Below, piece after piece: positions 13,218-63,384 of a DNA stretch of 64,000 bases (within the stretch, counting starts at the first letter, position 1; every line of letters begins with the position of its first letter). This stretch comes from Saccostrea echinata (Eukaryota). The DNA lies in NCBI RefSeq assembly GCF_033153115.1, contig NW_026889801.1, positions 5,456,001 through 5,520,000 of the forward strand. Reading direction: 5' to 3'. A program made the position numbers and the translations under genes. The notes beneath the pieces are model-generated. The model had not been told where the DNA came from, made no database searches, and worked only from the letters and a program-made list of their open reading frames with translations.

Positions 13218-14735
13218 ATGCAAATCTTGCAGTTTGTGTTTCATTATAGTCTTTCTATTGATTTGCTATGTCGGAATTAAGCTTATTGGTGAGTGACCAA
13301 TATCTATTTTATTTGTACCATAATATAATAAAAATTATACGATGAAATATGAAGATAACGAGCAGTATTCAAGCTCAACGTCCATTAAAACAATACAAAT
13401 TGGGAGAAGAGCAAACAGGGACCTCCAAAAACATCAGATGTGGGATTAGGTGCCATAGAGGAGTGAGCATTCTCTGCAGACCGGTCATACCCGCCATGTG
13501 CTCCTTGTCATGATCGGGAAATAACGGAAAAATCCGTCGACAACTTAGTGAATAAATAATAGCATAACAATTAGTATGAAAAACGTCAGTCAGCATATGA
13601 CTTAATGATAGATTGTATTTGCCGACAATGTCATTGTATCAACCATAGAACTTACGAAATGATGACTTTAAACGAGACTGGTGATATTCTTGTTTCATCA
13701 ACTTGTTTGTCAATAACTTACCTCGTTTTAGAAATTGTTCATACGAAGAGCATGTTCTTGCATATCGAATCAACTGAGAGACCCCATATGCAGGTGATAA
13801 GGGTGCGTACGTAAGGGAAGTTGACGATTGAAAAGTTACAGACATCACGCTTATCATAAAGCTTTGTTGTCAGATTACCATTAACGTCTTTTCTCTAGTA
13901 AAATATCCAAATATGTAACTGATATGCCAGCCTCTGGTATCGTTTATTTCAAGCTCACTGAGCTATATCGTGTCGACATATGAATGGAAATAACAATTGT
14001 TAATTCATAATACGTCGTCGATATATCTAAATGTCGAGTTGAAGACCACAGCAAGAGATTTCGTTTTCTCGTGTATAAGATTTTGAATTTGAATTTGAAA
14101 TTTTTATTTGAAGATTTTGAATTTTAAATGAACTATACTGTATAAAAATGCATTCCTTTTGGATTGTAAAAAAAAAACTTTCAGAGAAAAACATTTTTTT
14201 TTAAACTATTTCACATCAGAGAATAATTGTTGAAACAGGTATTAAGTTGAAAATATGCTGAGTTATAAATGTACTGTTCATATGTGCGAAGAAAATTTAA
14301 GAGAAATCATAAATGTAAGACTTCAAAATCGTAGTCTTCTTTTTTTACGGAATCGTACTTTGATTTTTCACTTGATTTATAGTATTTAAAAGAAAACTAA
14401 ATAATGCTGAATTCTTATTGTCCTTCTCCTGACCTCAATAATATAATTCCGGGTTTAATAAACCTTGAGTAAAGTAACATAAATGAAAACCGTTTGGGCA
14501 ATTCTAATATTAAGATTTTTTTCTGATACACAGTGAGATTAATATTTGAATCTTTTTGCAGAGTATTTTGAAGGCAAAATCTATGTTGCTTGTCTGAGTA
14601 ATTCCTCGAAGTCACATTCCACGAGTGAACCTGATGTCAATGTGAAGCCATCCCCCATTAATACAACTTTGAAAAATTTTCAAGATGATACTAGTATCCA
14701 GAATGACTATACAAGTTCAGATCTATTATCCACAT
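13218..14735 (+). pseudogene. Receptor-family copy B: broken partial duplicate of copy C (signal-like exon + stalk exon; no ectodomain, TM or tail exon)
   Basis: Signal-like exon ending ...VGIKLI-g|gtgagt at 13288, with ATG 13218 out of frame. Stalk exon 14562-14735 (EYFEGKIYVACLSNSSKSHSTSEPDVNVKPS...) is closely similar to 20811-20984, and intron 14150-14500 resembles 20440-20810. Confidence 0.7.
13341..14085 (-). mobile_element. Penelope-like retroelement fragment (RT C-terminal part + 3' end)
   Basis: Minus strand encodes AVVFNSTFRYIDDV and SPAYGVSQLIRYARTCSSYEQFLKRGKLLTNKL; the same 3' terminus occurs in other copies. Confidence 0.8.
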
Positions 14736-18515: not shown

Positions 18516-21500
18516 ATGGTTCACGCCATGTATTTAATCATACTTGTTTTATCGTTATGTAACTTTGGAAACACGCTTACTGGTAAGTGGTCATTAACAT
18601 TTCTTCACCTCAAAGGATACATCTTGTAACTATAACTGTTACAGCATTGATGCTAATTTTATATAACCCCTTGCTTGCAGATACATGTAGGAATGTTTCT
18701 TTTGCTTGCCAACGTAATGCTGGGTATCCTTATCCTATTGCTACCTTTGATGTTTAAAATAGGGTAAATGCTACATGAAGTTGCATTATTCTGTGGGAAA
18801 GTAATTTTTGCGGGGTGCAAACTTTGGCATATTTTTGCGTTTTTGAAGTAGCCCGTTCGAATTTTAATCGCTAAATCTGCACCCTTGCGTACAAGTTCTG
18901 AATGCAAGAAAAAAAATTTAATCAGTCTGTTGTTAAACAACATATGATTCATCTGGTATTTACTCAATATCTTGTTTAAATTGGTATTCAATAATTAAAT
19001 AAGGATGAATTTCCTCTTTTTTACAACATCTAATGACTTAGTGTTCGCCAAAATAAGTCCCGCCAAAATAATTGGCATACCTTTAAACAAGCAAAACGCC
19101 AAAATTTACACCAGCTAAAGAAACCCGCTGTACGGTATTTCAAATTAAAGGTTTGTAGTTTAAAGCAATAATTTTTTTTAAGACTATATATTTATATGTA
19201 TTTATATATATATACTCTAAATTATTGAACCAGTTTTATTTTTCCGTTGTCTGAATTAAATTTTTCACTAAAAATGCAGATTGATTTCCAGATGATAGTA
19301 TTAGATTAATTACATGTAATTAATCTAATTTCAGGCAATGAGTGAAGAATTGTGAAAATGACAAAGGCTTTAAAATTACTACTAACAACATAATTTTTTT
19401 ATAGGCTAATTTTTTTTTTTTTTTTAAATTTTTATTGCTAAATCAACCCAATTATAGCAGGTAATGGAATTTGTATGTTATGCACCATTAATCTCTTAAT
19501 GAATGGGGAATACCATAATTGTTATGTCCAACAAATGTTCAAGTGTAAAGATATTTATAAATTATTTTCATTATCAAGTATTTAATTCTCATAATAAATA
19601 AGGCATCAAAGGATTTTATGAATATAAATTATTAATAAGTTTTAAATCCTTACTCATGGTCACGGTAACATAGTTTTTTTTTCAAAAATAAATATCAACA
19701 TAGGATCGACCTATGTCTTTTTAAACCGTTTTGCATAACAATTTGCTCGAAATTTATGATTAACTGTTACTTATCCTCTCCTGACTCAATTTCATGGATA
19801 GTAATGCAGGAAATATAAGATAGAATATAGTCTAACATGTAAGATGAATAATCTATAAAGTAAAAAATAAACATCGAATGTTTATTTTTTATAAAAAAAA
19901 AAAATATGCAGGATTGTTTTAACTACAGATTATTTTCAGATCTCATATCTGTTTATGTTACAGATTGTAATAGCCAATCCGAGAATGGAAGCTTTGCCGT
20001 TGTAAATTATAAGGATGTCAATTTACAATGCAAATGTATCATAAAGACTCATTTTAATGGAATTTTAAAACTAACCTCTGGACCTCCTGATGTATGCAAT
20101 GTATGCTTTCCAGAAGTCAACTTATTTGATGTGAAAAATGGCAAAAAAGTGTTAAAACTGCCGTGTGCAATAAACAGATCTTCCGAAGAACTTCATGTTT
20201 CGATAAACAATATATTTGTTATGATACCTACAAATTTCAACTCTACGTCTAAAAGGGTTTGTCCCCAAGTAAGGATTTTTGAAGGTTCGTGAAATGTCAT
20301 CTTATGATTTGGACAATATTCCAATATTATAAATAAAATGTCTGTTTTGCAAAGTACTTCATGGTATTCAAGCATCTAAATCAAAACCAATATTGATAAG
20401 AGTACCTTCCTCATGTACTTAACTGTATATAGAAGGAGGTCTTTTAGATTGTAAAAAAAACTTTAAAACTTTTGTTTAATTATTTAACATCAGCGAATGG
20501 TTGTTAAAACAGGCATTAAAATGAAAATTAGCTGAGTTTTGTATGCCCTGTTTATATGCACGACCAAAATTTAAGAGAAATCATAAATAACACTTGAAAA
20601 TCGCAGTCTTCTCATTTATTTTACGGAATTTTTACTCTGATTTATCACTTGATTTACAGTACTTACATATGTAAAAGTAAATTAAATCATCCTGAATTCT
20701 TATTGTCCTTCTCCTGACCTCAATTATGTAATTGCTGCGTTTCAGGGTTCATAAAACGTTAAGTTCTATGAATGAAAAGCGCTACCACAATTCTAATATT
20801 TCTATTCCAGAGTATTTTAAAGGCAATATTTCTGTTGCTTGTATGAAAATCTCCTCGAGGTCAATGTCCACAAGCGAACCTGATGTCAATGTTAAACCAT
20901 CCTCAATTAAAACAACTTTGAAAACTGTTAGAGATGATACTAGTATCCAGAATGATTATACAAGTTCAGATCCGCTGTCCACAGGTGCGTATATCTAAAT
21001 ATACGTTAAGAAGAGTCCTAGGCTACTTATCTTACAAAATAAGTGTGTGCAAATGTAATTGTCATATTCAACCAAATTATAAGGACTGTTTAAATGCACA
21101 ATATTTTATTTTTCTTATTATGTCAAAAAATAATTTATATTTAATCGTTTCTTCTAAAGGATAACACAACAATCTTATGTAATTTGGTATATTTTCTCAA
21201 AAGAAATAGTTTGGAAAGCAACGTTTACGTTGTTAAAGGGAAGTTTTCCTCCAGGTCCATTTTAATAACAATTGCAGGCGATGTCCATATTAAGCTATAT
21301 TCCAAAGATATGACCAGAAATGCTGTTACAGATCATACAAATATACAAAATGATCCCATAAAAACAGAACCAAGTGCTAAAATTTCCTCCGGTACCTCTC
21401 CCTCGAAAGCTGTTGAAAATGATACCACTGACCTCAATGACTACCAAAGTCAGGATGCATTTTCTACATGTGCGTATATGACATATTACGATTAATAATT

Positions 21501-22013: not shown

Positions 22014-25000
22014 TAGATCAGTGAATATAACATTGAATATAAAGAAAAGGTTAAATATCAACAATTTTTGAGTGGTGAATGAATTGCTGAATCAATTGTT
22101 CATATAGTATGAATACAAGGTTGGTATTTTGTGTAGACATGTTGTTCGGACGAGATTGTTTAAACCAATGTCCCTATCGCAGTAGATGCTGTCACGATAA
22201 CACTACTCAAAGGCCGTAAGTGCCGAGTACGTACAGGTCTAAATTTGCAGCCCTCTAATGGCACGTGGTGGCGTCTCAATATGAGTGAATAATCCTCGAA
22301 GAGACTTTAAACAACAAACAAGCAAAGAAACAGTTATGAAGTTCTAAGTCAGTTAAATTCATAAGATATTCCAGATAGAGTCTTCCAGTTTAACTCAACC
22401 ATGTATTTGATATTCATCAAGGAAAAGTCCCCGGTTCTTCTGATTCTTTTTTTACTTGTGGCTACACAACTGTCTTAAATACTGGAAATATGTTAGAAAA
22501 TGTCAAACAATTTTTTAAAGGGGGATATTACACAACATAAAAGTCATTATTAGTCAATATTTCCATTTCTATTTGTTTTCTCTGTTATAACTCTTTGAAA
22601 GTTAGGAGAGTTGATTTCTTGATCATTCTAACGGAATGCAAATTTTGCCAAGCGAAAGGTCAGTAGTTAAGAAGGCATAATATGCATGTAATTCTCGTGC
22701 GGCTGTCTTTGTGTCTGACTCTAAGGAGGCCAATTATGCATGTAATTCTCGTGCGGCTGTCTTTGTGGTTGAGGTCAGTGGGCGGGGACTATTGAAATTG
22801 ACATGTGAGGCCCCGTGTAATTTAAATCTATTAGTCTACATTTTTAAAATCTAAATTTACAATTTTATTTTAAAATGAAATGGAAATATAAGGAATCACT
22901 GTCTAGTTAGTAGAGTATGCCAGGGACATCAACGATAGTTGGAAACGTGGGATAATTATGCATAACGGGCATCGCCCGTTATGCAAATTATCCCACGTTT
23001 CCAACTATCGGTGATGCCCTGGCATACTCTACTAACTAGACAGTGATTCCTTAATAAATTTTGGTTTTGGTTGATTATGTTATATTTTTTATGTGAAGAC
23101 TTGGAATATGCATACTGAAATTAATTTTTAATATCACTTTGTTTTCATCTTGATCCCACTTCTTTATGAGTATATTTCACTAGCATAAAAACTATAACGA
23201 CCCCGCTGGAAATTCCTTTCAAGTGCTATCCTTGGTATGCGAACACATATTATGCACCTAGTATTAATGTTTTTCTAAAACCAATTCCAATAAACTTTGA
23301 TTATCATCATTTTTTAAAGGTGGGGGGTGCCAAATATCATACTCTTTAATCAAAGTCCAGAATTTATTAGAAATGTTAAATAGAAATGTATACCAAGTAC
23401 CGGTAATTATCTATATACGAGGGTTGTCCCAGAAAAATGCTAACATTTGCAATATTTTTTGATTCACTGTTATTATAAAGTTAAATATGGTATTCACGCT
23501 AAACAACATTTTGTACATAATTCACAGAAATTTCAAAAAAAAATATCTCTATAAATAATATTTTTATCTTTGAACAACAAATCATTCAAAATAGCTGTCG
23601 GCGCAACACCGACGACATCAAAACGTAGCTCGTGGAGTTTTTGAATTTGTGTTGGAAACGTGCATCTTTAAAATGTTGATTTTCTTTTAGTTATCGAGCT
23701 ATCCATTTCACACATGCTACAGTTAAGAGTAAATCAATGAATTAATTCTTTTAAAAGACAATTTCCCAATCATAAACTAACTGCTCACATAGTGAACGGC
23801 GGTCTCCACGTATGACGCCAAGCTCAAGACTTTTCAGTTGTCATTTTTGTAGGTCTACTAAACGCTTCTTCTATCGGATAACTAGTCCATCATGCATCTT
23901 TGAACCTCATTTTTGTTGGTCTACTAAACGCTGCTTCTATCGGATAACTAGTCCATCATGCATCTTTGAACCTCTTTTACAAAGTATAAACAGTCGCCCG
24001 CGTGGGGCAGTGGTTAGAGCGTACGCTCTAGAGTCGCGGAGTAAGGAGTTGATCCTTACGTCGCGGATTCGAATCCCACTTTGGGACGTGGAGACCAGTC
24101 CTTCGGATGAGACCGTATAAACCGAGGTCCCGTGTCGCAGTAGGTGCTGGCACGAAAAAGATCCCTCACTGCTCAATAGCCTTGGGTGCCGAGCATAGGT
24201 CAAAATTTGCAGCTCTCCACCGGCAAGTGGTGGCGTCTCCATATGAGTGAAAAATTATCGTTAAACAATAAACAAACAAGCAAACAAAAACAATGTATAA
24301 ACCGGTGTTCGATACATGTATTTTGTGTCGTTCCTTGGTTCCAAGCTCTTTTCCCGTATGAACAGGGGTCATACAACGCTCCACGCAGTACTAAGTGATA
24401 ATTTGGTGCGCCGCATTATCGTTTGACGACGCCGTTTGTGCATATAACATCGTATTTTCTCTTAAATAAGGTTAGAGTATTGATTTTTTTTACACAAGAG
24501 TACCCTTGATAATACAGTTCCTATGGATGTAATTTTGGTCACATTATATTAACGTATACCTTGAAAATAAAGAAAACATCGCTGTCAGTGCAATTGTTGA
24601 AGGTCAAGAAATAGCCATGCGCCGAACACCGATATCTAACACTTTTTAAATGTTGTTTCTGATTGCATTTGAAATTACAACCTTATATAATTTTGCCAAA
24701 ATGACGAAAATATCATTTCCCAACATTGTGCCAAAAATGAATAATTTTCGTCAGGTAGTTTATGAAATATTTAAAAATTTCGCTTTTTTTCTGGGAAAAC
24801 CCTCGTATCTATTAATATAATGACAAATATCTTATCAATCCCTTTGTGTGTTATTTTATGAGTAGTCAGGAAATCAATAAAATATAACGTAGCTTTCCTT
24901 AAAAGGAATTCAAGACTTTGAATTAAGATATTTTATGTACATTATAATTTCTTTCTTATCTGTTCAGAGGCAGACAATCAGTATCAAACAACAATTCTGG

Positions 25001-25106
25001 TCGGCGGAAGAATGGCGCTTTTGATGGCGGACTTCCGGACAATCCTCTGTATCATTCCTACGAGCCACTGGAACATTCTGAGAGAAAGATATCAGGAGAG
25101 CAATAA
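18516..25106 (+). CDS. Receptor-family copy C: ~330-aa type I membrane protein with duplicated stalk exon and NPxY tail
   Basis: Exons: 18516-18582 (MVHAMYLIILVLSLCNFGNTLT signal), 19940-20284 (Cys domain), 20811-20984 and 21278-21469 (stalk), 21890-21965 (YILYGISGAAALIILGIIFVVIWCFR), 24968-25106 (…LPDNPLYHSYEPL…GEQ*). Total 993 nt, in frame, all AG/GT. Confidence 0.82.
21971..22008 (+). repeat. (CT)n microsatellite immediately after the TM exon donor of copy C
   Basis: Direct reading. Confidence 0.95.
22145..22325 (+). mobile_element. 5'-truncated decayed SINE (same family as 2197-2497)
   Basis: ggccgtaagtgccgag...aaatttgcagc...atatgagtgaa...aaacaacaaac. Confidence 0.75.
22889..23053. repeat. 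Near-perfect 165-bp palindrome in an intron of copy C
   Basis: taaggaatcactgtctagttagtagagtatgccaggg...gggc-atc-gccc...ccctggcatactctactaactagacagtgattcctta. Confidence 0.95.
23418..24805. mobile_element. Non-autonomous mariner-type element in a copy C intron, carrying a SINE
   Basis: ta|cgagggttgtcccagaaaaa ... tttttctgggaaaaccctcg|ta; related copy at 46818. Confidence 0.85.
23993..24289 (+). mobile_element. tRNA-derived SINE inserted in the mariner element
   Basis: Near-identical to 2197-2497; flanking caa(a/t)gtataaac duplication; the empty site is visible in the paralogous element near 47370. Confidence 0.9.
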
Positions 25107-25467
25107 AAAGATACCCAGTGTTCTACAGAAAAATATAATGAAGCTAGAGAGGCTGAAAACAATTCAATCTATGATAAAGCAAACAAAATTCAAGCGTAGG
25201 AGGCAAACACAAGTACTGACTTCATTTTTTGCAACACAGATCAGTTTCCTACTCTGACTTAATTTTCATATGTTAAACTCGTGTCTACGGGGATTGGAAA
25301 TCTTAATTATGGTTCTTCTATATAGTCGTATGAAGACAGAATTTCCAAAAAAGTGGCAATCCTGGCGGCGGAGAAAAGCATAATGAACAACTAATATCTT
25401 CATCCCATTGATGACTTTAGCATTCTGTTATATGCGTCAATGCATCGTCTCTCACACTTGAATAAGT

Positions 25468-43466: not shown

Positions 43467-46400
43467 ATGTCTACTTCTGGGATTTATATTTTATTTATTT
43501 TACTTTTATCTGACAATGGAGAACTACTTACTGGTAAGTCATTCATATGGAATTTCAGATACATTAGTTACTAATTCTCTCTCATTATAAGTGTACCTTT
43601 CAAGTATTTTTTTCTTCAAGGGCCGGATATTGTAAGAGTCATTATTTGATCTTTTTTTTAAAGTTTAGTTACGTAAGATCATTTAAAACAATTCTGCTTA
43701 AATATTTCATTGTAGACTATTTAGGAACATGTCAGTATAAACGCACCTTGATTCATTTACACATAGATTATTTGTTAGTTTATTTATATAACATGTGTAT
43801 TTTAAAAGTTAATCTAAGAGCTCAAAGTTTTAAAATTTTCATTAAAGTCGTCTTTCTCATGCAGGAGTTTTGCTTAATATTTTCACCTTGATGAGCCTTA
43901 AAAAAAACTTGAATCTCATTTACACATGATGTCGTGATAAAACATCTGTTTCAAACTTCCCCTTTACTTCTAATATTAAATGACGAGTTTTTATTCTATC
44001 ACATTACATTTCTTTTGTTAATGCTACATTCGGGTTATACGAGTGCGTATGAATTTAGAAAATTTACTTTAGGGCGTATTTTTATCATTTGTTATGTATA
44101 TTGGTTACATTTGTAATTGATGAATATATACTTTATATATTTCTTTCATTTACAGCTACTAAAAACGTCGATATAACAACGTGTGATGGTAGTACAAAGT
44201 ATGGCTCCGTGATTATAGTAAAATATAGTAAAATAAAATCTCACTGTGAGTGTCAGATAAAACCTCATTTTGTTGGGGTTTTAAAATTTGCTTCTAATGT
44301 GATTTCGTTTTCCTGTAACACGGAGATAAACATTTTTGAAAATGACAAGCCGGATGAAGTGTTAAGACTTGCGTGTGGTCCAAGGACTTCTGGCGGATTC
44401 AATGTAACCAATGAAAGTGTCCTTTTTATGACATCTAAATACGTCAATTCGTCAGCTGGAACTTTTGAACAAGAGGTTACAATATTTGAGAGTATGTAAA
44501 AGTTGATAAACATACAAAAATACAAAATGATGTTTGCATTTGCTTTGAAAGAAAATGTAGGTGAAAGTATATTTATAAATATCTCTGTGGTATGTATTTG
44601 AAATTGATTTTAGAAGTCATTCATTATTCATCATTATAAAAATAGAAAAAGGAGAATTGTTCGATTAATTGCATATTGTTTAACACCGATTCGGCAATTA
44701 TCCAGCCATATTTCGGCGGTAAAAACGACCATTAAATATATATTACTAAAGATGATCTATATCACAGTAGATAGTTCTGGGTTCATTTCTTGTGAGAAAT
44801 TCTGCCTTTAAATTGCGTATGAGTATAATATTACTTTTTTGCTTATAATACAAATCCTATTCTTAATTATATACCAATGGCCTCAGAATAGCATGTGTAG
44901 AATTTTAGTACTGCAATTCCTTTCTTGTATTCAAATTCCAGACATTCCAGACATATGATACATACTAGCACTGCATATTTTGATCACAAAGAGGCTAAAA
45001 GAAAAAAGTATAAATAAACTTACACAGCAAACAGCAATGAAATAAGTCATCCTAATAAACAAAATGGGGCTAGTAAAAAAAATGCGAATTTAGAGAATAT
45101 CTGTATTAAAGCATATATTTTCTTTACTGTATTTTCTTAGGAAATTGATCAAACTTTATAAAAACAAAGTATGTTTTGTCTTGTTGAAGTTCCACGGGAA
45201 AAATTATGAAAAAATACTTTCAGAAAAAAGTTTCAATGGCACAATTTCTGTCACTTGTGGAGATAATTTCTCAACTTCAATGACAACAACAAAATGGACC
45301 ACAAATACTGATGGTACAAAAAACAGAATAACTACCAACACCGATGTCTCCTTAAAAACAGAAGGAGGGGACCTCCAAAGCAAAGATAAGACAAACTACA
45401 CAGTAAAATGTAAGTATATTGTACATGTTTTTTAACATATTGATAAAATTTGTTTTCCTAAATATTTTCCTCTAAAATTGTGAAGAAAAAAGAAGTTATC
45501 AAGATATTATTAAGAACATGAAAACTGCAATTTATGGAAATTCGTGAGGAATTACTTTTCAAAGATAAATAATTATTGTTTTTCAACGTAGTTTCAATTA
45601 ACGATAGTTGTTTCCATTCATATGTCGACACGATATATCCAAATGAGCTTCAAATTAGAGATATCACAGAGTCTGACACCTCTGTTTCGTATGGATATTT
45701 TACTAGAAAAAGACCTTAAAGATGACCTTACAACAAAGCTTTATATTAAACGTGATGATCGTCATCTTCCCTTACTTATGCAGCAATATACCCTTACCAC
45801 TTGCATATAGGGTTTATATCTCTAAGTTGATTCGATACGCAAGAGCATGCTCGACGTATGAACAATTTCAAAACCGAGGTAAGTTATTGACAAACAAGTT
45901 GATGAAACAAGAATATCAACAGTCTCGTTTAAAGTCATCATTTCGTAAGTTCTATGGTCGATACAATGACCTTATCAGCAAATAAAATCTTACCTTAAAT
46001 CGAATGCTGACTGACGTTTTTCATACAAATTGTTAGGCCATTATGTACACACTGAATTGTCGACGGATATTTCCATCATTTCCCTATCATAAGAAGAAGC
46101 ACACGGCGGGTGTGACCTGTCGACAGGGGATGTTCACTCTGCTCCTAATTTGTATTGTTTGAATGGACTTTTGAGCTTGAATATAATTTGTTATCTCCAT
46201 TTATTTCATTTCAGATATTATATTTGGTGTTGCTGGAACTGCTGTGATTTTATTAGCAGGCATTTTTTCATTAGCTGTTTGTCATTTCAGGTTCTATTTC
46301 ATTATTTTTCTTTCACATTTAATTTAAATTGTTGACTTCTTACCCAAATATATTTCACGTTGGCAAATTATTAATTTATAACTCTGTACATTTGTTAAAA

Positions 46401-46727
46401 TAATTAACTTTTAACATATTTTACTTGAGATATTCTACACATTTAAACGATTTATCTTCCTCTAGACGGAAACAATCAGTCCTGAGCACAACATATCTGA
46501 AAGATGAAATCAACTCTGAACAGAAAAATGTAGACATTTTTAAGGAACTCCCAGACAATCCTCTTTATCACTCATATCAGCCTGAAGACGTGGAAAATCA
46601 GACTTATGCTCAACCCAATAAGAACAAAGAAAAGACCCAAATAAAAGAAGTCCGCAAATCTGTTACGCAAGCAAAATCTGCTAATGAAGATGATTGTGAT
46701 ATTGTTTATGCCAAAGTGAATAAATAA
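43467..46727 (+). CDS. Receptor-family copy D: ~308-aa type I membrane protein with NPxY and terminal ITIM
   Basis: Exons: 43467-43533 (MSTSGIYILFILLLSDNGELLT), 44156-44491 (Cys domain), 45224-45409 (Thr-rich stalk), 46215-46290 (YIIFGVAGTAVILLAGIFSLAVCHFR), 46466-46727 (…ELPDNPLYHSY…TYAQP…DIVYAKVNK*). Total 927 nt, in frame, all AG/GT. Confidence 0.85.
45580..46213 (+). mobile_element. Penelope-like retroelement fragment in the stalk-TM intron of copy D
   Basis: FPYLCSNIPLPLAYRVYISKLIRYARACSTYEQFQNRGKLLTNKLMKQEY; 3' terminus abuts the acceptor at 46214. Confidence 0.8.
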
Positions 46728-46817: not shown

Positions 46818-47490
46818 CGAGGGTTGTCCCAGAAAAACGCGAATTTTTTCAATATTTTTCGTTTCACTAATGTTATAAAGTTAAAACTTGGCATGCACTA
46901 TAATCAACATTTTTTTACATAATTCACAGAAATTTCAATAAAATATCTCTATAAATAACATTTCTCTCTCTGATAAATCATTCATTCAAAGTAGCTCCCG
47001 GCGCAACACCGACGACGTCAAAACGTAGCTCGTGGAGTTTTTGAATTTGTTCAGAAATGGTGCGTCTTTAAAAATTCGTTCGTAGCAGAAATTCGATAAT
47101 GCATTTGATTTTTTTTTAGTTACCAAGTTATCCATTTCACGCGAACTACAGTTAAGAATAAATTAAGGAATTAATTCTTTTAATAGACAATTTTCCAACC
47201 CCGATTATAAAGTCAACTTCTCGCATAGTTAACGACGGTCTCCACGTATGACGTCCAGCTACATGTATAGACTTTTCAGTTTGTCGGCATTTTTTTTTTT
47301 TTTTTTTTGGTCTACCAAACGCTTCTTCCATCGGATAACCAGTCCATCCATCTTTGAACCTCTTTTGCTAGGTATAAACCAGTGTTCGACACATGTATTT
47401 GTATTTGTATCGTTTCCTCGTTCCCAGCTCTTTTGCCGTATAAAAAGGAGTCATACCTCGCTCCACACAGTAATGAGTGATAATTTGTGT
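46818..47490. mobile_element. Truncated copy of the mariner-type element at 23418
   Basis: ta|cgagggttgtcccagaaaaac; colinear with 23418-24400 but lacking the SINE; no right TIR seen. Confidence 0.8.
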
Positions 47491-53000: not shown

Positions 53001-53639
53001 GTATGTATGTTTATTTAGGTTTAGGCGAAATGTTCATTTTATTTAAAGTCTTTTATATATTTGATATGCAAATCGGTATACATGTAAACGTAAATGTAAA
53101 TGCCTGGTAAATAAATTTTGAAATAATTCTTAAATTTCTATACAAAGTTCGAAACTTAAACCTAAACTTAGAAACTAGTTAAAATTAAAAAAAAGATATT
53201 TACAAATCAAATAATCTTTCACTATTTCATAAAAAAAATTGAATATACTTGCAATAGTGCCCACAACATACTCTACGTGGATGTGTTCGAAGGGTACAGA
53301 TACTTATGTATGAGTGGTTAAAAACTAAACATGAGACAAGTTTGCTGGAACACTCTCCTTGTTATAAATTACGAGGTTTACGTGTGAAGTATTTTATGAA
53401 AAGACCTACGTGACAAAGTTCAGTTTATATCAAGAAGGATGTGTAAAACACCGGAACCTAGGATAGATATTGATTATGAAAAGGAATTTTGGTTGATGAG
53501 GTACATGTACAGAACGCCTGGCGATATTCTGTTTTATTTATGTTAGCTTGTGTTTAAAACGCAATATTTTACTTTTTTCTTTCATTTCTTTCAGTAACCA
53601 CCAATGCAGTGATGTAACCAAACAATTACAGGTTTAAAT

Positions 53640-55170
53640 ATGGCACAGGATGTTCTTAGATGTGAATTATGCCTAAACATTGAATTCAAATTGGAAGCGG
53701 ACGCTTTTTGTAACACATGTAATGTGAATCTGTGTAAAACCTGCGTTGGTCATCATATCATATCGATACCTTCCTTGAAGCATAATGTGATGACTCTTTC
53801 AAGTCGAAAATGTGGTTTTAAAATCCCTGTTTGTCCTCATCATTCAAAGCAAAATTGTGAGCTCTACTGTCCAAATTGTGTTTCTCCAGTCTCTGTTGAA
53901 TGCATTGCATCTGGGTCACATAAATTTCACGATATTGAGGAAATTAACAAGGTATATAAATCAAAAAGACTAAATGCAGAGAAAGACAAATTTGAATTAG
54001 AGAATTGTATATTACCAGAGTTTGATTCAATAATTGCTGAAATTGAATACCTTGATCAAGGACTTAGAGAACAGCATAAAAATCTAAAAGAGGCAATCAC
54101 ACAATGTGGGAAAACAGCACATGACGTTCTGGATAAAGTGAAAGAGAAATATTTAGCAGATGCAGACAATCTTGAAGCAGAGGATATTAAATCGGTAAGA
54201 ATACTTAGTCGTATTTTTCATCATTTGAAACTGAACGTAGAGTCAGAATTGAAAGTTCTGCAAAAGGTTATGTTGGAAAGAGATTTTAGCAAATTGGAGA
54301 GCTACTCATCAAAGGTTGAGGAACTAAGAATAGTACCAGCTCGTTTTCAATTATCAGTTCCTGCTTTTCAAATGTCCATGCTTTCCGAAGATAAACTTTT
54401 TCAAGAAATTGGAAGTCTACCATTATCTCTTAAAACTCTTTTTCCAACGGAGACAATTAAATGTCATCATAGCCTTAAAGTGTTTGAAAAAAAATTTCAA
54501 AAAGATTTTGCAAAATTCCAAAGCTACTAACCGTTTTTGATACAGGTTTCAAACACACACTAAGAGTAAGTTGTTCCAGAACACTAGACCAATTTTATGT
54601 CAGTGGGGATGCAGAATTTATCAGGCTTATAACTTTTAAAGGTGATGTTTTGGAAAAACTCGCGACAAAGTCTTGCAACAACAGATATAACGGTAACCAA
54701 AGATAATGCTTTGGTTTACGCTGATGGTAGAGATCGCAGCATAAATATTGTTAAAGATAAAAAAAAAAGTTGAATGTATCATAAAAAGATTGGAAGCCAT
54801 GGTCAGTTACCAGTACATCAACTAATGAACTTCTGGTTTCGATGTGGACCGAAAGTTTCAAAGATAGTAAAGTTGTTCGTTTTTCAGATTCTCTAGCAAT
54901 TCAGGAGATTCAATATCGAGAAGATGGACAACCTTTATATCATTACCCTGCTTTTGTGGAAGAAAACGTCAATTTGGAGGTGATAGTGTCTGACATAAAT
55001 GAAAATCAGACAAACTGGGAAAGCTAAAGTTTGTATACGACGGAAAGTTTAAATCCCAAAGGTACCCAGAATTTCATCCCTTTGGTTTAGCTACTGATAG
55101 TATCGGTAACATTCTCATTGCAGACAGTGAAAAGTTGTATATTCTTTATAAATACAAGGAAAATATATAA
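53640..55170 (+). pseudogene. TRIM-like B-box1/B-box2/coiled-coil/NHL gene; 296-aa intact ORF followed by a frameshifted NHL region
   Basis: CELC...FCNTCNVNLCKTCVGHH and CPHH...CELYCPNC...C...H..H B-boxes plus a coiled coil (53640-54530). NHL-like segments (DITVTKDNALVYAD, WKPWSV, IQYREDGQPLY, FHPFGLATDSIGNILIAD) continue in shifting frames to ~55170. Acceptor at 53594. Confidence 0.8.
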
Positions 55171-56650: not shown

Positions 56651-58606
56651 TTATGTAAAATATAATTTTGTTTCGCCATATTTTTCGGCTATTTGACGAT
56701 TGATATCCACTGAAGAATCTCGGTAGATTAGTTTGAGCGCACTTCCTTCACCTTTTAGTATAAATTGTTCATTTCCTATTTCATCAATGAAAGATTGCAA
56801 AGCTTCTTTATTTTCGTCCGCAAAGTCATTGAAAGCATAAAAATAACACAATTCGATGACAGAGTTAAATATTCCCTTGTCTCTTTCAACAGAATTATTA
56901 CTTTCTATCTCATTTTCAATTGTTCTTATATCATTTTCATCAAATTTATGTGGCATGTTCAGATACTCTGTTGCTTTGTCAACGTCTTTCAACAGTTTCT
57001 TGTAATCCCCATTTTCTGATCCAAAGGGACACAATTTTGACAAGACGTTATGTGGAACGAAGAAACTCGATAAGTTTTTCTTGTGCAAACATTCCTTCAA
57101 AATAATCCAGGCCTCAAACAAGCGAACAGATAAATTATCTTTTGTCCAGCACACATCTTCATAATACCAAGCCATCAAATAGAATACAATAGTCTTCAAC
57201 CAGTAGGAAGGAATAGCTGGTTCCATTCTGAAGAGAATGTCATTATACCGCTTTGGTATATATTTTTGGTCAAAGAATTTTAGCGAACGCAAAATTGTTT
57301 TCCTACCATCCATTTCAGGAAAGCTCGCCCATATTTCTTTTTCTAGAAGTGCTCTTGTCCATCTGGCCTCGCCATCAGACCTTAGTAACAAGTAAATTTT
57401 CTCTTCGCTTCGGTTGTTTTTTCGCTTGCCTTTGGTGCTAATACCTGGTCGAGATTTGTCTAAAATGTCTTGATTGAAATCAATATTTGTTTCGAATTCC
57501 GAGGGTTTTAAGCAAATACAAATATCTAGGTCCACAATTAAATGCCTGTAAATTTGCCCTTTCCAAAGCAGTTTGTTTGTTTGCGCTAAGGTTGACGTTA
57601 ATGCTGGAACAGTGTCCAACCACTTCCAACCAGGTAATACATTCTTTTTCATAGTATTTGCTAGTTCTATCTGAATTTCATTCCACACTCGTCGCATAAA
57701 TGTTTTGTCGTCTCTTCCTTCTGCTAAATCTTCTGAAAGATCTTTAAAATCTTGAAACACTTCTCGGTTTTTCACACGGACGTCTCTGTTTTCATGCTTT
57801 AAGGAATACATGCCTTCTGTATAAAACTCTAAAGACTGATTAAAACATGGGAGATCTATCATGAAATCAAACTCGTCTGGGTCACCAAATTTTGTTCCTT
57901 CAACCATGCTTCCCATTTCGATGATGGAATAATTTTTGAAAACAAGATGGTGGTTTGCCATATCTTTACAAACATTTTCCAAAATTATTCTCACGTCTGT
58001 GCGAATTTTTTCATATTCAGGGGACATTTCCCTTCGAAATGCTTCTTCGGCTTCTTTCAACACAAAATTAATCAACTCAAAATTTACATTTTGATTTTCG
58101 ACATTTAATTCTGGAATGTATGTTTCCCGAAAATTATGTCTTTCGTGGGGATCAAATGTTTCATCAAATTCACTCAAAAAAACATCGGGATTTAATTTTG
58201 GTTGCAAAGGAGATTTATCCCACGGAAGAAAAGGCCATTTGGGTCTAGAAAGAGATGGGTTTCCATCTGGCTTGATTATACTGAATGTTGGATTAAGTCC
58301 TTTTGCAATTCTCCTGATGCCTTCTCTTCTTTTTTCTATGTATTCATTAGAATGCACTGCTAAGATAGGTTCAAAAATATTATTTCCGGCTATCGGCATT
58401 GGACTGAAAGGCAGAAAAGGTTGTTTCGAAAGTACACTGCTCATGTTAGTTAAGATTGTTTCGCATCCACTGCTTCTATTCAAAAGACAATTTTGGGATG
58501 CATCATTACTTCCTTTACTGGACAATAATGTACCATCGACATCAAAAGATGTTTGTCTGTTGACACATAATTTTAGCTCATCTTCGGGTGGAGGAGTCTC
58601 TCTCAT
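56651..58606 (-). CDS. Mab-21/cGAS-like nucleotidyltransferase (cGLR), 651 aa
   Basis: GSMVEGTKFGDPDEFDF (GS + D/E-x-D catalytic motif), IVDL third acidic strand, Mab-21 C-lobe motifs ILRSLKF, PSYWLKT, SSFFVPH; uninterrupted ORF with an acceptor just upstream (exon starts 58636). Confidence 0.92.
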   Translation of the reverse strand: MRETPPPEDELKLCVNRQTSFDVDGTLLSSKGSNDASQNCLLNRSSGCETILTNMSSVLSKQPFLPFSPMPIAGNNIFEPILAVHSNEYIEKRREGIRRIAKGLNPTFSIIKPDGNPSLSRPKWPFLPWDKSPLQPKLNPDVFLSEFDETFDPHERHNFRETYIPELNVENQNVNFELINFVLKEAEEAFRREMSPEYEKIRTDVRIILENVCKDMANHHLVFKNYSIIEMGSMVEGTKFGDPDEFDFMIDLPCFNQSLEFYTEGMYSLKHENRDVRVKNREVFQDFKDLSEDLAEGRDDKTFMRRVWNEIQIELANTMKKNVLPGWKWLDTVPALTSTLAQTNKLLWKGQIYRHLIVDLDICICLKPSEFETNIDFNQDILDKSRPGISTKGKRKNNRSEEKIYLLLRSDGEARWTRALLEKEIWASFPEMDGRKTILRSLKFFDQKYIPKRYNDILFRMEPAIPSYWLKTIVFYLMAWYYEDVCWTKDNLSVRLFEAWIILKECLHKKNLSSFFVPHNVLSKLCPFGSENGDYKKLLKDVDKATEYLNMPHKFDENDIRTIENEIESNNSVERDKGIFNSVIELCYFYAFNDFADENKEALQSFIDEIGNEQFILKGEGSALKLIYRDSSVDINRQIAEKYGETKLYFT

Positions 58607-58720
58607 ATAAACGACTGTTTCCTTGGAAATTCGGTTCTAAAATGAGACAAAATACATTTTCAATTCGGAAACAATTAACTTACTCCTATAACCAGTGGTG
58701 TGAATCAATAGGTACCGTAT

Positions 58721-60990: not shown

Positions 60991-62816
60991 TGAACAAGAA
61001 TCAGATTAGGAGAATGAGATTGAACCTTCCAAACACAAAGCAAACACCCTGCCACACGGCTACCATGACCGGTAGGAACGTAGCATGGACATACAAGACA
61101 TTACACTTCCTGATAATTTTTCTGTTATTTTTGATTTTTGCAATGGCCTTGGCCATAGAAACCGGGGTCGGGGGGGGGGGGGGGGGTTGGGGCAATGATT
61201 GTACCTATGTATAGTATACTATTAAATAAATACGTCGTATAAAGTATTCTATAGAAAAACAGCTACTTTATGCTTGTGCTCTCTCAATAATAATATCTAA
61301 TAACCCTTTTTATACTTGTCAAGTTTTTGTCCACTGTATACCCCTTACTAAAATGGTTGCCTCATCCCACATCTGAAATTGCTTCCAACGGGTCTGATTG
61401 TTGTCTAGAAGTTCTAAAGAAGAAGCCCCTTTTTATAGATTTTTCTTTTGTATTTTTGTTTTTCTACAGTTTACACTGATTTCCTTTTGGGATTCTTTAT
61501 CTACCCCGAGGTTCACGATTTGAACCAACTTAAATCTACACTACATGAAGACGCTTTAATGTAAATATAACAATTTGAAGCTCTGTTGTTTAAAAGATCT
61601 TTTATTCAGAATTCCCTTTTCATTGTAAAGCATTAATTCCTATTTACTGCCCGAGAGCACATGCATTCAACATGCTTAAATATTAATAATATAAGGAACC
61701 ATTTACAAGACACATTTACTTGATACTATAGCGATTATGGAGAGAACGATCTTTAAATGACTCTACATTATTTTCACTAATTCGTAATTATCTCATCTTG
61801 AAATGGTGAATGGAAATTCATTCAAAAGAGTTGAAATCATCTAAATGCATCAGATGACTGACAAGTCCTTAAATAGAAGGAACTGAATACTTGAATGCAT
61901 CATAATTTTGCTCGGCATATATTTTTGGAAATGACTGAGTTATTTATCCGTTGATAAAATTTCAGAACATTTTTATCTAGATCTGGTTTGTCCAGTAATC
62001 CTGTTGTTAATCATATCATCAATGATATCTGATTTCTCACGTTTTAATCAAAAGCAATTTTTTCTGAAATATAAAGTAGTCAATAAAAAACAAATATATA
62101 TTATAATTAATATAAAAGCCTGAGTGTTTTAAAATCAATTAAACATATTACCAGGATTTAAGACTAAATATCTTATTAATAAGAAAAACGGCATGACTTT
62201 ATCCATGTATAGTTTAAACAGGTACGTACTTTCAATAAGCACATAATATCTTTCTATGTCTAGTTTTGAAGTATTCAAGCTAAAACGAAATTGGGAGTGT
62301 ATAGCAATTTGAAAGTTAAACTTGATATGTCGACACAATAAATACAGGTATTAAGACAAGAGTCAGTGAAGCATGCATCGATAATTAAAGTTTATAAAGA
62401 CAACTTTAAATGGACACAGCCTCTAAATATGCAAGTTACAGGTAGATATGTAAATAGTTTTAAATTCCAGCCGTCTTAATTTTGAGCACAAGAGCAATAT
62501 ATTGTAATTACTATTCTGATATCTCCAACGCTGAGAAAACCTTCAATCAGGACAACCGCGTGACAGACGCACTAGGGTAAGAAAAATAAAATAAGAAAGA
62601 AAAAAAAGAATAAAATAAGAAAAAAAAGTAAACCGTAGCATTATGTTCAAATCCCATACGCGCATCATTTAAAAGTTAGCAAATCTATCAAATTTTCAAT
62701 TCTGTTTGTAGCGTTGGAGTGATAACAAGTTGTTTTACGCCTTTTTTCTTTGGTAAAACAGAAAGATTCATATGTGCATTTTTCTTGTTTACAAAGATAC
62801 AACTACCACATGTAAA

Positions 62817-63384
62817 ATGGCAACAGCATCAGATCTATACTCTGGAGCACAGTATGTTAAACGATGTCAACTTTGCCCTGGAAAAATTAGAAAATCTATA
62901 GCAGAAACGGTGTGTAATACATCTCAAGTCAGTCTCTGTAAAGACTGTGTAGGTCAACATATGATCTTCGATCCAAATGTAAGACATGTTGTTGTTACCT
63001 TTGAGTTCAAAAAATCTGAAATCACTCCACCACAGTGTAGTGTTCACTGAGAAGAAATGTTTGAATTGTTCTGTGAACAATGTGACTCTCTGCTTTGTTT
63101 GAAAAGCCTTGCATCTGGATCACATGAAAATCACACTGTCTCACAAATATCTAAAATTTACAGCTCTAAAAAAAACTCCCATAAGAAAAGACCCAGATGA
63201 ACTAGAAGCTGACATTGCACCTGTGTATGAATCAATTCTGTCTGGAATCGAAGCAATGCCATGGGGTATCGTCCAAAAACATGATGAAAGACGAAAATCT
63301 ATGAATGACCTTAGTAAAACATGTCACAAAATTGTAAACAAGGTCTTTGAAAAATATCAGAGATATGTCCAAGACACGATGTAG
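62817..63384 (+). pseudogene. Second TRIM-like B-box gene, disrupted
   Basis: MATASDLYSGAQYVKRCQLC...LCKDCVGQH; in-frame TGA at 63048 inside B-box2 (continues EEMFELFCEQCD...SGSHENH); frameshift at the A-run near 63170; truncated by a repeat at ~63385. Confidence 0.8.

What the first reader, a model, noticed from the sequence alone, without database searches (positions are those of the whole stretch)
46466..46727. Paired-receptor logic: copy D keeps a canonical ITIM while its closest ectodomain relative (copy A) does not
Seen: the D tail ends DIVYAKVNK*, which fits the ITIM consensus [ILVS]xYxx[ILV], and also carries NPLY (NPxY, a PTB-binding/endocytosis motif) and YAQP. A and D domain exons are the same length with 73/112 identical residues (manual count). 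The colinear A tail, however, has NSPY instead of NPLY, has two YxxL motifs (YVEL, YIPL) and stops before the ITIM position. Similar ligand-binding domains coupled to different tails is the known design of vertebrate paired inhibitory/activating receptors; a mollusc equivalent is my inference.
Basis: partly seen in the sequence, partly recalled or inferred. Interest (0 to 1): 0.82.

Follow-up and report, generated by a model that had tools for sequence, protein, structure and literature searches.

The report
Oyster receptor family with swapped tyrosine-motif tails
Copy D is an intact, annotated gene of an oyster-only family of single-pass membrane proteins; its ITIM-like tail end is conserved across species and absent from a second conserved tail type (copy A), but copy A shows none of the marks of an activating partner.

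Summary
Window 46466-46727 is the last exon of a five-exon gene in Saccostrea echinata, LOC133204120 (XP_061195873.1). Its tail carries NPLY and YAQP and ends DIVYAKVNK, with IVYAKV fitting the ITIM consensus.

One ITIM match means little: 18% of shuffles of this tail contain one. The weight comes from conservation. The last nine residues are invariant in four D-type genes of two Saccostrea species, and they are homologous to a VYAxV-K motif repeated in longer tails of Crassostrea relatives. The A-type short tail (…HIY[IV]PLQ, then stop) is also conserved across species and under purifying selection.

- **Closest relative:** A is not D's closest ectodomain relative. A unit 33 kb upstream of the window is 89% identical in the domain. 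It is a mosaic: D-like from promoter to domain exon, A-like in stalk, membrane segment and tail.
- **Pairing:** similar ectodomains on different tails is real. "Inhibitory versus activating" is not shown for A. Its membrane segment is uncharged and its two YxxL motifs are 18 residues apart.
- **ITAM-like tails:** these do occur in Crassostrea members, one on an ectodomain 85% identical to an ITIM-like neighbour.
- **Ectodomain:** a jelly-roll, not Ig.
- **Expression:** could not be tested.
- **Earlier notes:** the scan noted a different ITAM/ITIM-tailed family elsewhere in this genome.

The parts
43467..43533 (+). Gene D exon 1: start codon and signal peptide (22 codons + 1 base)
   Evidence: sequence, donor GTAAGT. 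The translation equals the N-terminus of XP_061195873.1 (P0089).
44156..44491 (+). Gene D exon 2: 112-codon ectodomain (5 invariant Cys), jelly-roll beta-sandwich
   Evidence: AlphaFold2 pLDDT 88.5. Best structural matches are GOLD, PPC and CUB-type sandwiches at Z 7-8.6. No Pfam hit.
45224..45409 (+). Gene D exon 3: FNGTISVxCG box and Ser/Thr-rich stalk
   Evidence: Matches P0089.
46215..46290 (+). Gene D exon 4: transmembrane segment, with no charged residue inside the membrane
   Evidence: Matches P0089.
46466..46727 (+). Gene D exon 5: cytoplasmic tail (the finding), from the RRKQSV juxtamembrane site to the stop
46557..46568 (+). NPLY (NPxY) inside the family-wide LPDNPLYHSYQ block
   Evidence: This block is a 13-residue invariant run in the four D-type tails.
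46701..46718 (+). IVYAKV, the ITIM-consensus match. It lies inside the invariant terminal DIVYAKVNK.
424..759 (+). Gene A exon 2: ectodomain. Exon 1, the signal peptide, lies about 490 nt upstream of window base 1.
2556..2729 (+). Gene A exon 3: stalk
3049..3127 (+). Gene A exon 4: transmembrane segment, uncharged
3366..3546 (+). Gene A exon 5: short (A-type) tail, 59 codons, with NSPY, YVEL and HIYIPL (Tyr motif at 3505-3516)
   Evidence: Identical on the second haplotype, C99.
19951..20286 (+). Gene C ectodomain exon (about 31% identical to D)
24968..25199 (+). Gene C tail exon: stop at 25104-25106, followed by a still readable relic of the terminal Tyr motif (NSIYDKANK)
   Evidence: The same stop occurs in the C39:27613 copy.

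Best explanation
**What D is (shown).** D belongs to an oyster-restricted, tandemly expanded family of type I membrane glycoproteins. Each has a signal peptide, one ~110-residue jelly-roll ectodomain with five invariant Cys, a Ser/Thr-rich stalk, one membrane segment, and a cytoplasmic tail assembled from tyrosine motifs.

**The ancestral tail (shown).** It is still seen in long-tailed members. It carries LPDNPLYHS (NPxY), GYST, two to three copies of x[VI]YA[KQE]x-K, and L-x-Y-x-x-V. D-type tails are a shortened version that keeps NPLY, one YAQP-K copy and the terminal IVYAKV-NK copy. A-type tails stop soon after the first copy, which in them reads HIY[IV]PL.

**How the classes arise and persist (shown).** Both classes are maintained by purifying selection in two Saccostrea species. 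Exchange of whole 3' modules (stalk, membrane segment, tail) re-assorts them with ectodomains, as in the mosaic unit at C52:5423238.

**Most likely mechanism (inferred).**
- The conserved tyrosines are phosphorylated docking sites.
- The terminal IVYAKV fits the binding preference of SHP/SHIP-type SH2 domains (hydrophobic at -2, Ala at +1, Val at +3). D-type proteins would then deliver a dampening signal that A-type proteins with near-identical ectodomains cannot deliver.
- On this reading A-type proteins are differently wired or signal-poor counterparts, not activating ones.
For: - **Gene model.** My five-exon model equals XP_061195873.1.
- **Family size and range.** The own genome has at least 18 domain exons plus further ones. 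There are 79 representatives among 1.84 billion proteins. Every named one comes from Ostreidae and all are labelled 'uncharacterized'.
- **Terminal motif.** DIVYAKVNK is invariant in D, in C39:52920 and in two S. cucullata genes, although their tails are only 72-91% identical. Of 87 tail columns, 56 are invariant. The last nine are all invariant (P = 0.015). All four motif Tyr are invariant, while the other Tyr vary.
- **Homologous motifs in distant members.** These include AVYAQVNKP, AVYAQVSKP, LVYTDV, LLYMEV and LMYLDV.
- **A-type tail is conserved.** It is found in A, its C99 allele, C12, C52:5423238 and S. cucullata isoform X3.
- **Selection.** dN/dS is 0.21 for the D-type tail, 0.24-0.62 for A-type tails and 0.21-0.46 for domains between paralogous copies.
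- **Mosaic unit.** Its similarity to D runs from upstream of exon 1 to the end of the domain exon and stops there. Its 3' half matches A and C12. Synonymous divergence is 0.16 against D in the domain and 0.17-0.35 against A-type copies in the tail.
- **Pathways exist in oysters.** ITIM-SHIP2 and ITAM-Syk signalling have been shown experimentally in C. gigas on IgSF receptors (PMC11841013, PMC6994640).
- **Neighbours.** The window also holds a Mab-21/cGAS-like gene and B-box genes.
Against:
- The ITIM pattern is degenerate (18% of shuffles).
- In the homologous motif of distant members the -2 position is A, G or D rather than hydrophobic. What the family conserves is YAxV, not the full ITIM.
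- NPxY plus YxxV would serve equally well as sorting signals.
- The four D-type tails are not independent: tails cluster by species, which suggests gene conversion.
- The function of the ectodomain is unknown.
Confidence: 0.55

Rival explanations
1. The tails are trafficking or engulfment signals rather than immune-inhibitory ones. NPxY would recruit PTB adaptors of the GULP/CED-6, Dab or Numb type. YxxV and YxxL would act as AP-2 YxxPhi endocytic signals or CED-1/Draper-like docking sites. The D/A difference would then tune internalisation or recycling.
For: - The most conserved block in the whole family is LPDNPLYHSYQ.
- One S. cucullata member repeats the NPLY unit four times (P0002).
- YAKV, YIPL and YAQV all fit YxxPhi.
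- The -2 position of the VYAxV motif is not conserved as hydrophobic across the family.
- That CED-1/Draper/MEGF10 tails combine NPxY with YxxL is my own knowledge, not tested here.
Against: - Ala at +1 and a basic residue shortly after the motif are conserved in a way that a bare YxxPhi signal does not need.
- Some family members carry ITAM-like pairs, which are signalling motifs rather than sorting motifs.
- A itself has lost the strict NPxY (NSPY) yet is intact on two haplotypes.
Confidence: 0.22
2. The ITIM match is a by-product of a conserved C-terminal sequence with another role, or with none that depends on tyrosine phosphorylation. The A/D difference would be ordinary divergence among paralogues with no paired logic.
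For: - The pattern arises in 18% of shuffles.
- Only some family members satisfy the strict consensus.
- Tails evolve in concert within a species, which can inflate apparent conservation.
- There is no functional evidence of any kind.
Against: - All four motif tyrosines are invariant while non-motif tyrosines vary.
- The motif persists in members whose ectodomains are below 40% identical and in other genera.
- Both tail classes are kept in two species.
- dN/dS is below 1.
Confidence: 0.13
3. Copy A is a silent or decaying copy, so the A/D comparison has no functional meaning.
For: - No annotated protein matching A was returned when the closest A-type protein (P0004) was used as query, although D, C12 and C39 copies are annotated.
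- A's NPxY has degenerated to NSPY.
- Copies C and C39:27613 show that premature stops do occur in the family.
Against: - All five A exons are open with canonical GT-AG borders, including a signal-peptide exon.
- The second haplotype (C99) is 97% identical in the domain and 100% in the tail.
- dN/dS of A against its A-type paralogues in the tail is 0.24-0.34.
- An A-type protein is annotated in S. cucullata and on C12.
Confidence: 0.1

Closest known systems
Vertebrate paired inhibitory/activating receptors (KIR, LILR/PIR, Ly49, SIRP, CD33-related Siglecs); compared from my own knowledge
   Same: - Tandem multigene cluster.
- Ectodomains up to 89% identical joined to different membrane and tail modules by module exchange.
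- One class carries a conserved [ILV]xYAxV motif very like VTYAQL or IVYTEL.
- The other class was made by truncation before that motif.
   Different: - The ectodomain is a jelly-roll, not Ig or C-type lectin.
- The short-tailed class has no charged membrane residue and keeps a 52-67-residue tail with its own conserved Tyr motifs.
- No adaptor is known.
- The family is restricted to oysters.
- No function has been tested.
Oyster IgSF receptors with tested tails: CgNCAM1 (two ITIMs, binds CgSHIP2; PMC11841013) and CgIgR (ITAM, recruits CgSyk; PMC6994640)
   Same: - Single-pass oyster membrane proteins with ITIM or ITAM motifs in the tail.
- They show that the downstream SH2 machinery exists and is used in oyster haemocytes.
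   Different: - Those are single Ig-domain receptors.
- They are not described as tandem paralogues with exchanged tails.
- They share no sequence relationship with this family (no Pfam Ig hit).
Invertebrate allorecognition families with ITAM/ITIM-like tails: Hydractinia Alr (10.1101/2022.03.04.482883) and the Botryllus fuhc-linked receptors (PMC12065747)
   Same: Lineage-specific, clustered, rapidly diversifying receptor genes whose members differ in ITAM-like versus ITIM-like tails.
   Different: - Different phyla and different (Ig-like) ectodomains.
- Oysters are not colonial, and no allorecognition phenotype is linked to this locus.
CED-1 / Draper / MEGF10 engulfment-receptor tails (my own knowledge)
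   Same: NPxY combined with YxxL-type motifs in a single-pass receptor tail.
   Different: - No EGF repeats.
- A different number and arrangement of motifs.
- D has YxxV rather than YxxL.
CUB, GOLD and PPC (collagen-binding) jelly-roll domains
   Same: - An all-beta sandwich of about 110 residues with 10 strands.
- VIA Z 8.6 (GOLD), 8.1-8.3 (PPC) and 7.2-7.7 (CUB) over 90-100 residues.
- The language-model neighbours that carry a name are CUB.
   Different: - No sequence-level match to any of these Pfam families.
- The Z values are flat and within the range common for unrelated sandwiches.
- The Cys pattern is the family's own.

Membership tests
ITIM-bearing inhibitory receptor | Cytoplasmic [S/I/V/L]xYxx[I/V/L] | tested here: met
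   IVYAKV at 46701-46718. The same pattern appears in 18% of shuffles.
ITIM-bearing inhibitory receptor | Type I topology: signal peptide, one membrane segment, motif on the cytoplasmic side | tested here: met
   The five-exon model equals XP_061195873.1. The hydrophobic segment is followed by RRKQS.
ITIM-bearing inhibitory receptor | Motif conserved in orthologues | tested here: met
   DIVYAKVNK is invariant in four genes of two Saccostrea species.
ITIM-bearing inhibitory receptor | Tyr phosphorylation and recruitment of SHP-1/2 or SHIP | not testable with these tools
   Needs phosphopeptide binding or cell assays.
Paired inhibitory/activating receptors | Highly similar ectodomains on different tails, genes clustered | tested here: met
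   D against C52:5423238 is 89% identical in the domain, with a D-type versus an A-type 3' module, 77 kb apart. D against A is 65%.
Paired inhibitory/activating receptors | The partner has a charged membrane residue for an ITAM adaptor, or its own ITAM (YxxL/I-x6-8-YxxL/I) | tested here: not met
   - A-type membrane segments have no internal charged residue.
- YVEL and YIPL are separated by 18 residues.
- The first Tyr is Ser in the C52:5423238 unit.
Paired inhibitory/activating receptors | ITAM-tailed members exist in the same family | tested here: inconclusive
   - ITAM-like tails occur in Crassostrea: P0092 has YTEL-x8-YDSL and P0052 has YTEL-x12-YESL.
- P0052 against P0067 is 85% identical in signal peptide plus ectodomain.
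- No such tail was found in S. echinata with the queries P0021 and P0094.
Paired inhibitory/activating receptors | Opposite signalling outputs | not testable with these tools
   Needs reporter assays.
Immunoglobulin superfamily receptor | Ig-like domain in the ectodomain | tested here: not met
   No Pfam hit. The predicted fold is a 10-strand jelly-roll, and no Ig-domain entry was among the 50 listed structural matches.
CUB domain (PF00431) | Match to the Pfam model, or a clearly best structural match | tested here: inconclusive
   - No Pfam match at E up to 10.
- CUB structures score Z 7.2-7.7, below GOLD and PPC.
- Atlas feature scores are 0.83-0.87, which makes this a lead only.
CED-1/Draper-type engulfment receptor | NPxY plus YxxL in the tail, and EGF repeats outside | tested here: not met
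   NPLY is present in D, and YxxL only in A-type tails. There is no EGF or any other Pfam domain.

The most novel reading that the evidence does not exclude
This uncharacterized, oyster-only jelly-roll receptor family is a true paired-receptor system that arose independently of the vertebrate Ig and lectin ones.

- Closely related ectodomains would be re-assorted onto three kinds of tail: ITIM-like (D-type and long tails), signal-poor short (A-type) and ITAM-like (Crassostrea members).
- The re-assortment would happen by exchange of 3' modules, and possibly by splicing between neighbouring units, as the NCBI isoform models suggest.
- The result would be opposing signals from the same ligand specificity.
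Probability: 0.25. Interest if true: 0.8.

Novelty: new variant of a known kind. Interest (0 to 1): 0.55.

Why it matters
Paired receptors with near-identical ectodomains and opposite tails are a hallmark of vertebrate innate immune regulation and of host-pathogen arms races. In molluscs only isolated Ig-type ITIM or ITAM receptors have been studied.

Here the same genomic logic appears in a lineage-specific, non-Ig family: a tandem cluster, exchange of tail modules, and conserved ITIM-like, short and (in Crassostrea) ITAM-like tails. If it signals as inferred, that would show convergent evolution of the design.

It also gives oyster immunology a concrete, experimentally tractable gene set: LOC133204120 and its neighbours in Saccostrea, and LOC111105461, LOC105333905 and LOC117691699 in Crassostrea. 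Oysters are farmed animals with major disease losses, so regulators of haemocyte activation have practical interest.

Tried and rejected
**Family and structure searches that gave no assignment**
- Pfam on every exon and on ten family members gave nothing beyond noise from the membrane segments.
- A PDB sequence search gave nothing.
- Foldseek against PDB gave only weak jelly-roll and CBM hits, TM up to 0.6.

**Ideas rejected**
- An Ig-like ectodomain.
- A canonical ITAM in A: the spacing is 18 residues.
- A charged membrane residue in A-type copies.
- C39:52920 as a mere allele of D. It is collinear with D but only 75-82% identical in nucleotides including introns, whereas the true haplotig of A is 97.6-97.9% identical.

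**Inconclusive or unresolved**
- The domain tree could not resolve the order within the D/A clade; most forks have under 80% support. I rely on pairwise identity and dS instead.
- The ITAM-type tail was sought in S. echinata with P0021 and P0094 and not found with these queries. This is no proof of absence.
- The tails of C52:5266526, 4841849, 4801603 and 4966754 could not be located in the 10 kb fetched.
- Paper searches for the LOC and XP identifiers found nothing on this family.

- I never sent my own joined exon model to a search tool. Exons were searched one by one by reference, and full-length comparisons used database proteins returned by the searches.
- The N run at 1352-1560 (intron 2 of A) was left untouched.

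Full report
**1. What is at the coordinates**

The window is C52:5456001-5520000 of a 923 Mb genome. Contig lengths attached to annotated proteins identify it as Saccostrea echinata.

Window 46466-46727 is the last of five exons of a plus-strand gene:

| Exon | Coordinates | Content |
|---|---|---|
| 1 | 43467-43533 | signal peptide |
| 2 | 44156-44491 | ectodomain |
| 3 | 45224-45409 | stalk |
| 4 | 46215-46290 | membrane segment |
| 5 | 46466-46727 | tail |

All borders are GT-AG. The conceptual product is identical to XP_061195873.1, LOC133204120 isoform X1, 308 aa (P0089).

The tail contains RRKQSV next to the membrane, then NPLY, YAQP and the C-terminal DIVYAKVNK. IVYAKV (46701-46718) fits the ITIM consensus.

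Copy A spans 424-759, 2556-2729, 3049-3127 and 3366-3546. Its signal exon lies about 490 nt upstream of the window. Its tail has NSPY, YVEL and HIYIPL and stops 13 codons later. The two domain exons are both 336 nt and share 72 of 111 full codons plus the split first codon.

**2. Is the ITIM match more than chance?**

Taken alone, no. The pattern appears in 18% of shuffles of the D tail.

Conservation makes the case. Four D-type genes have tails that are only 72-91% identical overall: D, C39:52920 (P0086), and two S. cucullata genes (LOC134250542 and LOC134243361). Yet all four end in the same nine residues.
- Of 87 aligned tail columns, 56 are invariant.
- The invariant runs sit on the Tyr motifs: 13 residues around NPLYHSY, and 9 at the C-terminus.
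- The last nine columns being all invariant has P = 0.015 by column shuffle.
- The four motif tyrosines never vary, whereas the other tyrosines do.
- dN/dS of the D-type tail is 0.21.

One caveat applies. Tails cluster by species, so concerted evolution reduces the independence of the four sequences.

**3. The family**

The D ectodomain exon finds at least 18 exons in the own genome and more with a distant query. Most lie on C52 between 4.80 and 5.50 Mb, with copies on the contigs C99, C39 and C12.

A profile of 15 paralogous domains finds only 79 representatives at E ≤ 0.001 among 1.84 billion proteins. Every named one is from Ostreidae (Saccostrea, Crassostrea/Magallana, Ostrea), and every one is called 'uncharacterized'.

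No Pfam family matches. The AlphaFold2 model (pLDDT 88.5, ten strands) is a jelly-roll sandwich. Its best matches are tied and middling:
- GOLD, Z 8.6
- SID1 ectodomain, Z 8.5
- PPC / collagen-binding domain, Z 8.1-8.3
- CUB, Z 7.2-7.7 (Foldseek; Atlas lead to CUB)

It is not an Ig domain. Nothing here shows what it binds.

**4. Tail anatomy across the family**

Long-tailed members are P0071 from S. echinata contig C99, P0038 from S. cucullata, P0067 from C. virginica and P0078 from C. gigas. They share, in order: LPDNPLYHS, GYST, [IM]P[VI]YA-x-x-KK, x-VYA[QE]V-x-KP and [LF]-x-Y-x-[DE]-V.

D's QTYAQPNKNK and DIVYAKVNK align with the first and third YA copies. The ITIM-like end is therefore an inherited family motif.

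In distant members the -2 position is A, G or D. The family-wide constraint is YAxV followed by Lys, and the full ITIM consensus is a feature of the D lineage and of the separate L-x-Y-x-x-V motif.

Other derived tails also occur:
- C and C39:27613 have a shared stop after GEQ, with a readable relic of the terminal motif in C.
- The C52:5402115 unit has a short tail.
- The C52:5368037 unit ends in a second NPxY (NPIYAKP).

**5. The A-type tail**

The A-type tail is a real class. It occurs in five places:
- A
- its C99 haplotype (tail 100% identical)
- C12:11345693 (annotated, P0004)
- the unit at C52:5423238 and its C99 copy
- S. cucullata LOC134250542 isoform X3 (P0088)

All keep N-D-T-[YS], DN[PS][PS]YQSYQ and HIY[IV]PLQ, and stop at or shortly after that point. 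dN/dS is 0.24-0.62.

In the alignment, HIYIPL occupies the position of D's QTYAQP. A-type tails have therefore kept the first YA-type site, changed to YxxL, and lost everything after it.

The upstream YxEL Tyr is shared with three of the four D-type tails (D itself has Phe) and with more distant members. It is ancestral, not an A-specific gain.

**6. The pairing**

Genome-wide, D's nearest ectodomain is not A. It is the unit at C52:5423238: 89% identical in protein and dS 0.16, against 65% and dS 0.92 for A.

That unit is a mosaic. Nucleotide similarity to D runs from upstream of exon 1 through intron 1 to the last base of the domain exon and then ends. Its stalk, membrane and tail exons match A and C12.

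What fails is the 'activating' half.
- A-type membrane segments have no internal charge.
- The two YxxL motifs are 18 residues apart, where an ITAM needs 6-8.
- The first Tyr is Ser in the very unit that pairs best with D.

**7. Beyond the window**

Some Crassostrea members have ITAM-like tails.
- C. angulata XP_052712177.1 has YTEL-x8-YDSL, the canonical spacing.
- The C. gigas form has YDSV at the second site.
- C. virginica XP_022295476.1 has YTEL-x12-YESL.

That C. virginica protein is 85% identical (130 of 153) in signal peptide plus ectodomain to XP_078326535.1. The tail of XP_078326535.1 carries NPLY, IGYSTI and LMYLDV, and the rest of the two proteins is unrelated. This is the best paired-receptor-like case in the family.

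I therefore cannot say whether the two are neighbours, alleles or assembly-specific. No ITAM-type tail was found in S. echinata with two queries.

**8. Context in the literature**

ITIM-SHIP2 signalling (CgNCAM1, PMC11841013) and ITAM-Syk signalling (CgIgR, PMC6994640) are experimentally described in C. gigas. The downstream machinery therefore exists, and an ITIM receptor in a mollusc is not new in itself.

Clustered invertebrate receptor families with ITAM/ITIM-like tails are known in Hydractinia and Botryllus (PMC12065747; 10.1101/2022.03.04.482883).

No paper was found on this family.

**9. Verdict**

- **Observation:** confirmed.
- **Interpretation:** partly supported. The tail dichotomy, its conservation and its re-assortment with ectodomains are shown. 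Inhibitory function of D is a reasonable inference. An activating role for A is not supported.

Noticed in passing
window 45224 (D stalk exon acceptor) and C52:5423238-5423570, about 33 kb upstream of the window: NCBI isoform X2 of LOC133204120 (XP_061195874.1, P0087) joins the domain exon of the upstream unit to D's stalk, membrane and tail exons. The splice spans about 77 kb and skips units A and C. The junction codon GAA uses the upstream exon's last base. S. cucullata LOC134250542 isoforms X2 and X3 likewise share one signal exon between a D-type and an A-type unit. This could be real splicing between units or a prediction artefact.
   Followed up: partly
Crassostrea proteins P0052, P0067, P0092 and P0091 (not in the window): Family members with ITAM-like tails: YTEL-x8-YDSL in C. 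angulata and YTEL-x12-YESL in C. virginica. The C. virginica pair P0052 and P0067 has 85% identical ectodomains and unrelated tails.
   Followed up: partly
window 46466-46484; also 24968-24986: A juxtamembrane RRxQS[VL] site of the basophilic-kinase type is conserved in D-type and C-type tails and in the more distant C52:5402115 and C52:5368037 tails. A-type tails lack it and begin RK[AT]KPIPK.
   Followed up: no
window 25104-25199: Copy C's tail has an in-frame TAA followed by a readable relic, NSIYDKANK. The C39:27613 copy has the same stop, but its relic is frameshifted, so the stop is old and the downstream part is decaying.
   Followed up: yes
window 56654-58636 (-), 53613-54527 (+), 62757-63047 (+): Neighbouring open frames: a Mab-21_C (cGAS-like) protein of at least 661 codons, and two B-box zinc-finger proteins.
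   Followed up: partly
window 45707-45982 (+) and 13642-13869 (-); 2192-2473 (-), 23940-24254 (-) and about 47155-47367: Two kinds of repeated, ORF-bearing elements lie in introns of A, C and D and downstream of D. They are probably transposon remnants and have no Pfam match.
   Followed up: no
contigs C99 (327 kb) and C39 (1.69 Mb) of the same assembly: C99 is a second haplotype of C52 from about 5.36 to 5.46 Mb; its copy of A is 97.6-97.9% identical in nucleotides. C39 carries copies of C and D that are only 75-82% identical in nucleotides, so they are old paralogues or very divergent haplotypes.
   Followed up: partly
   Followed up: no
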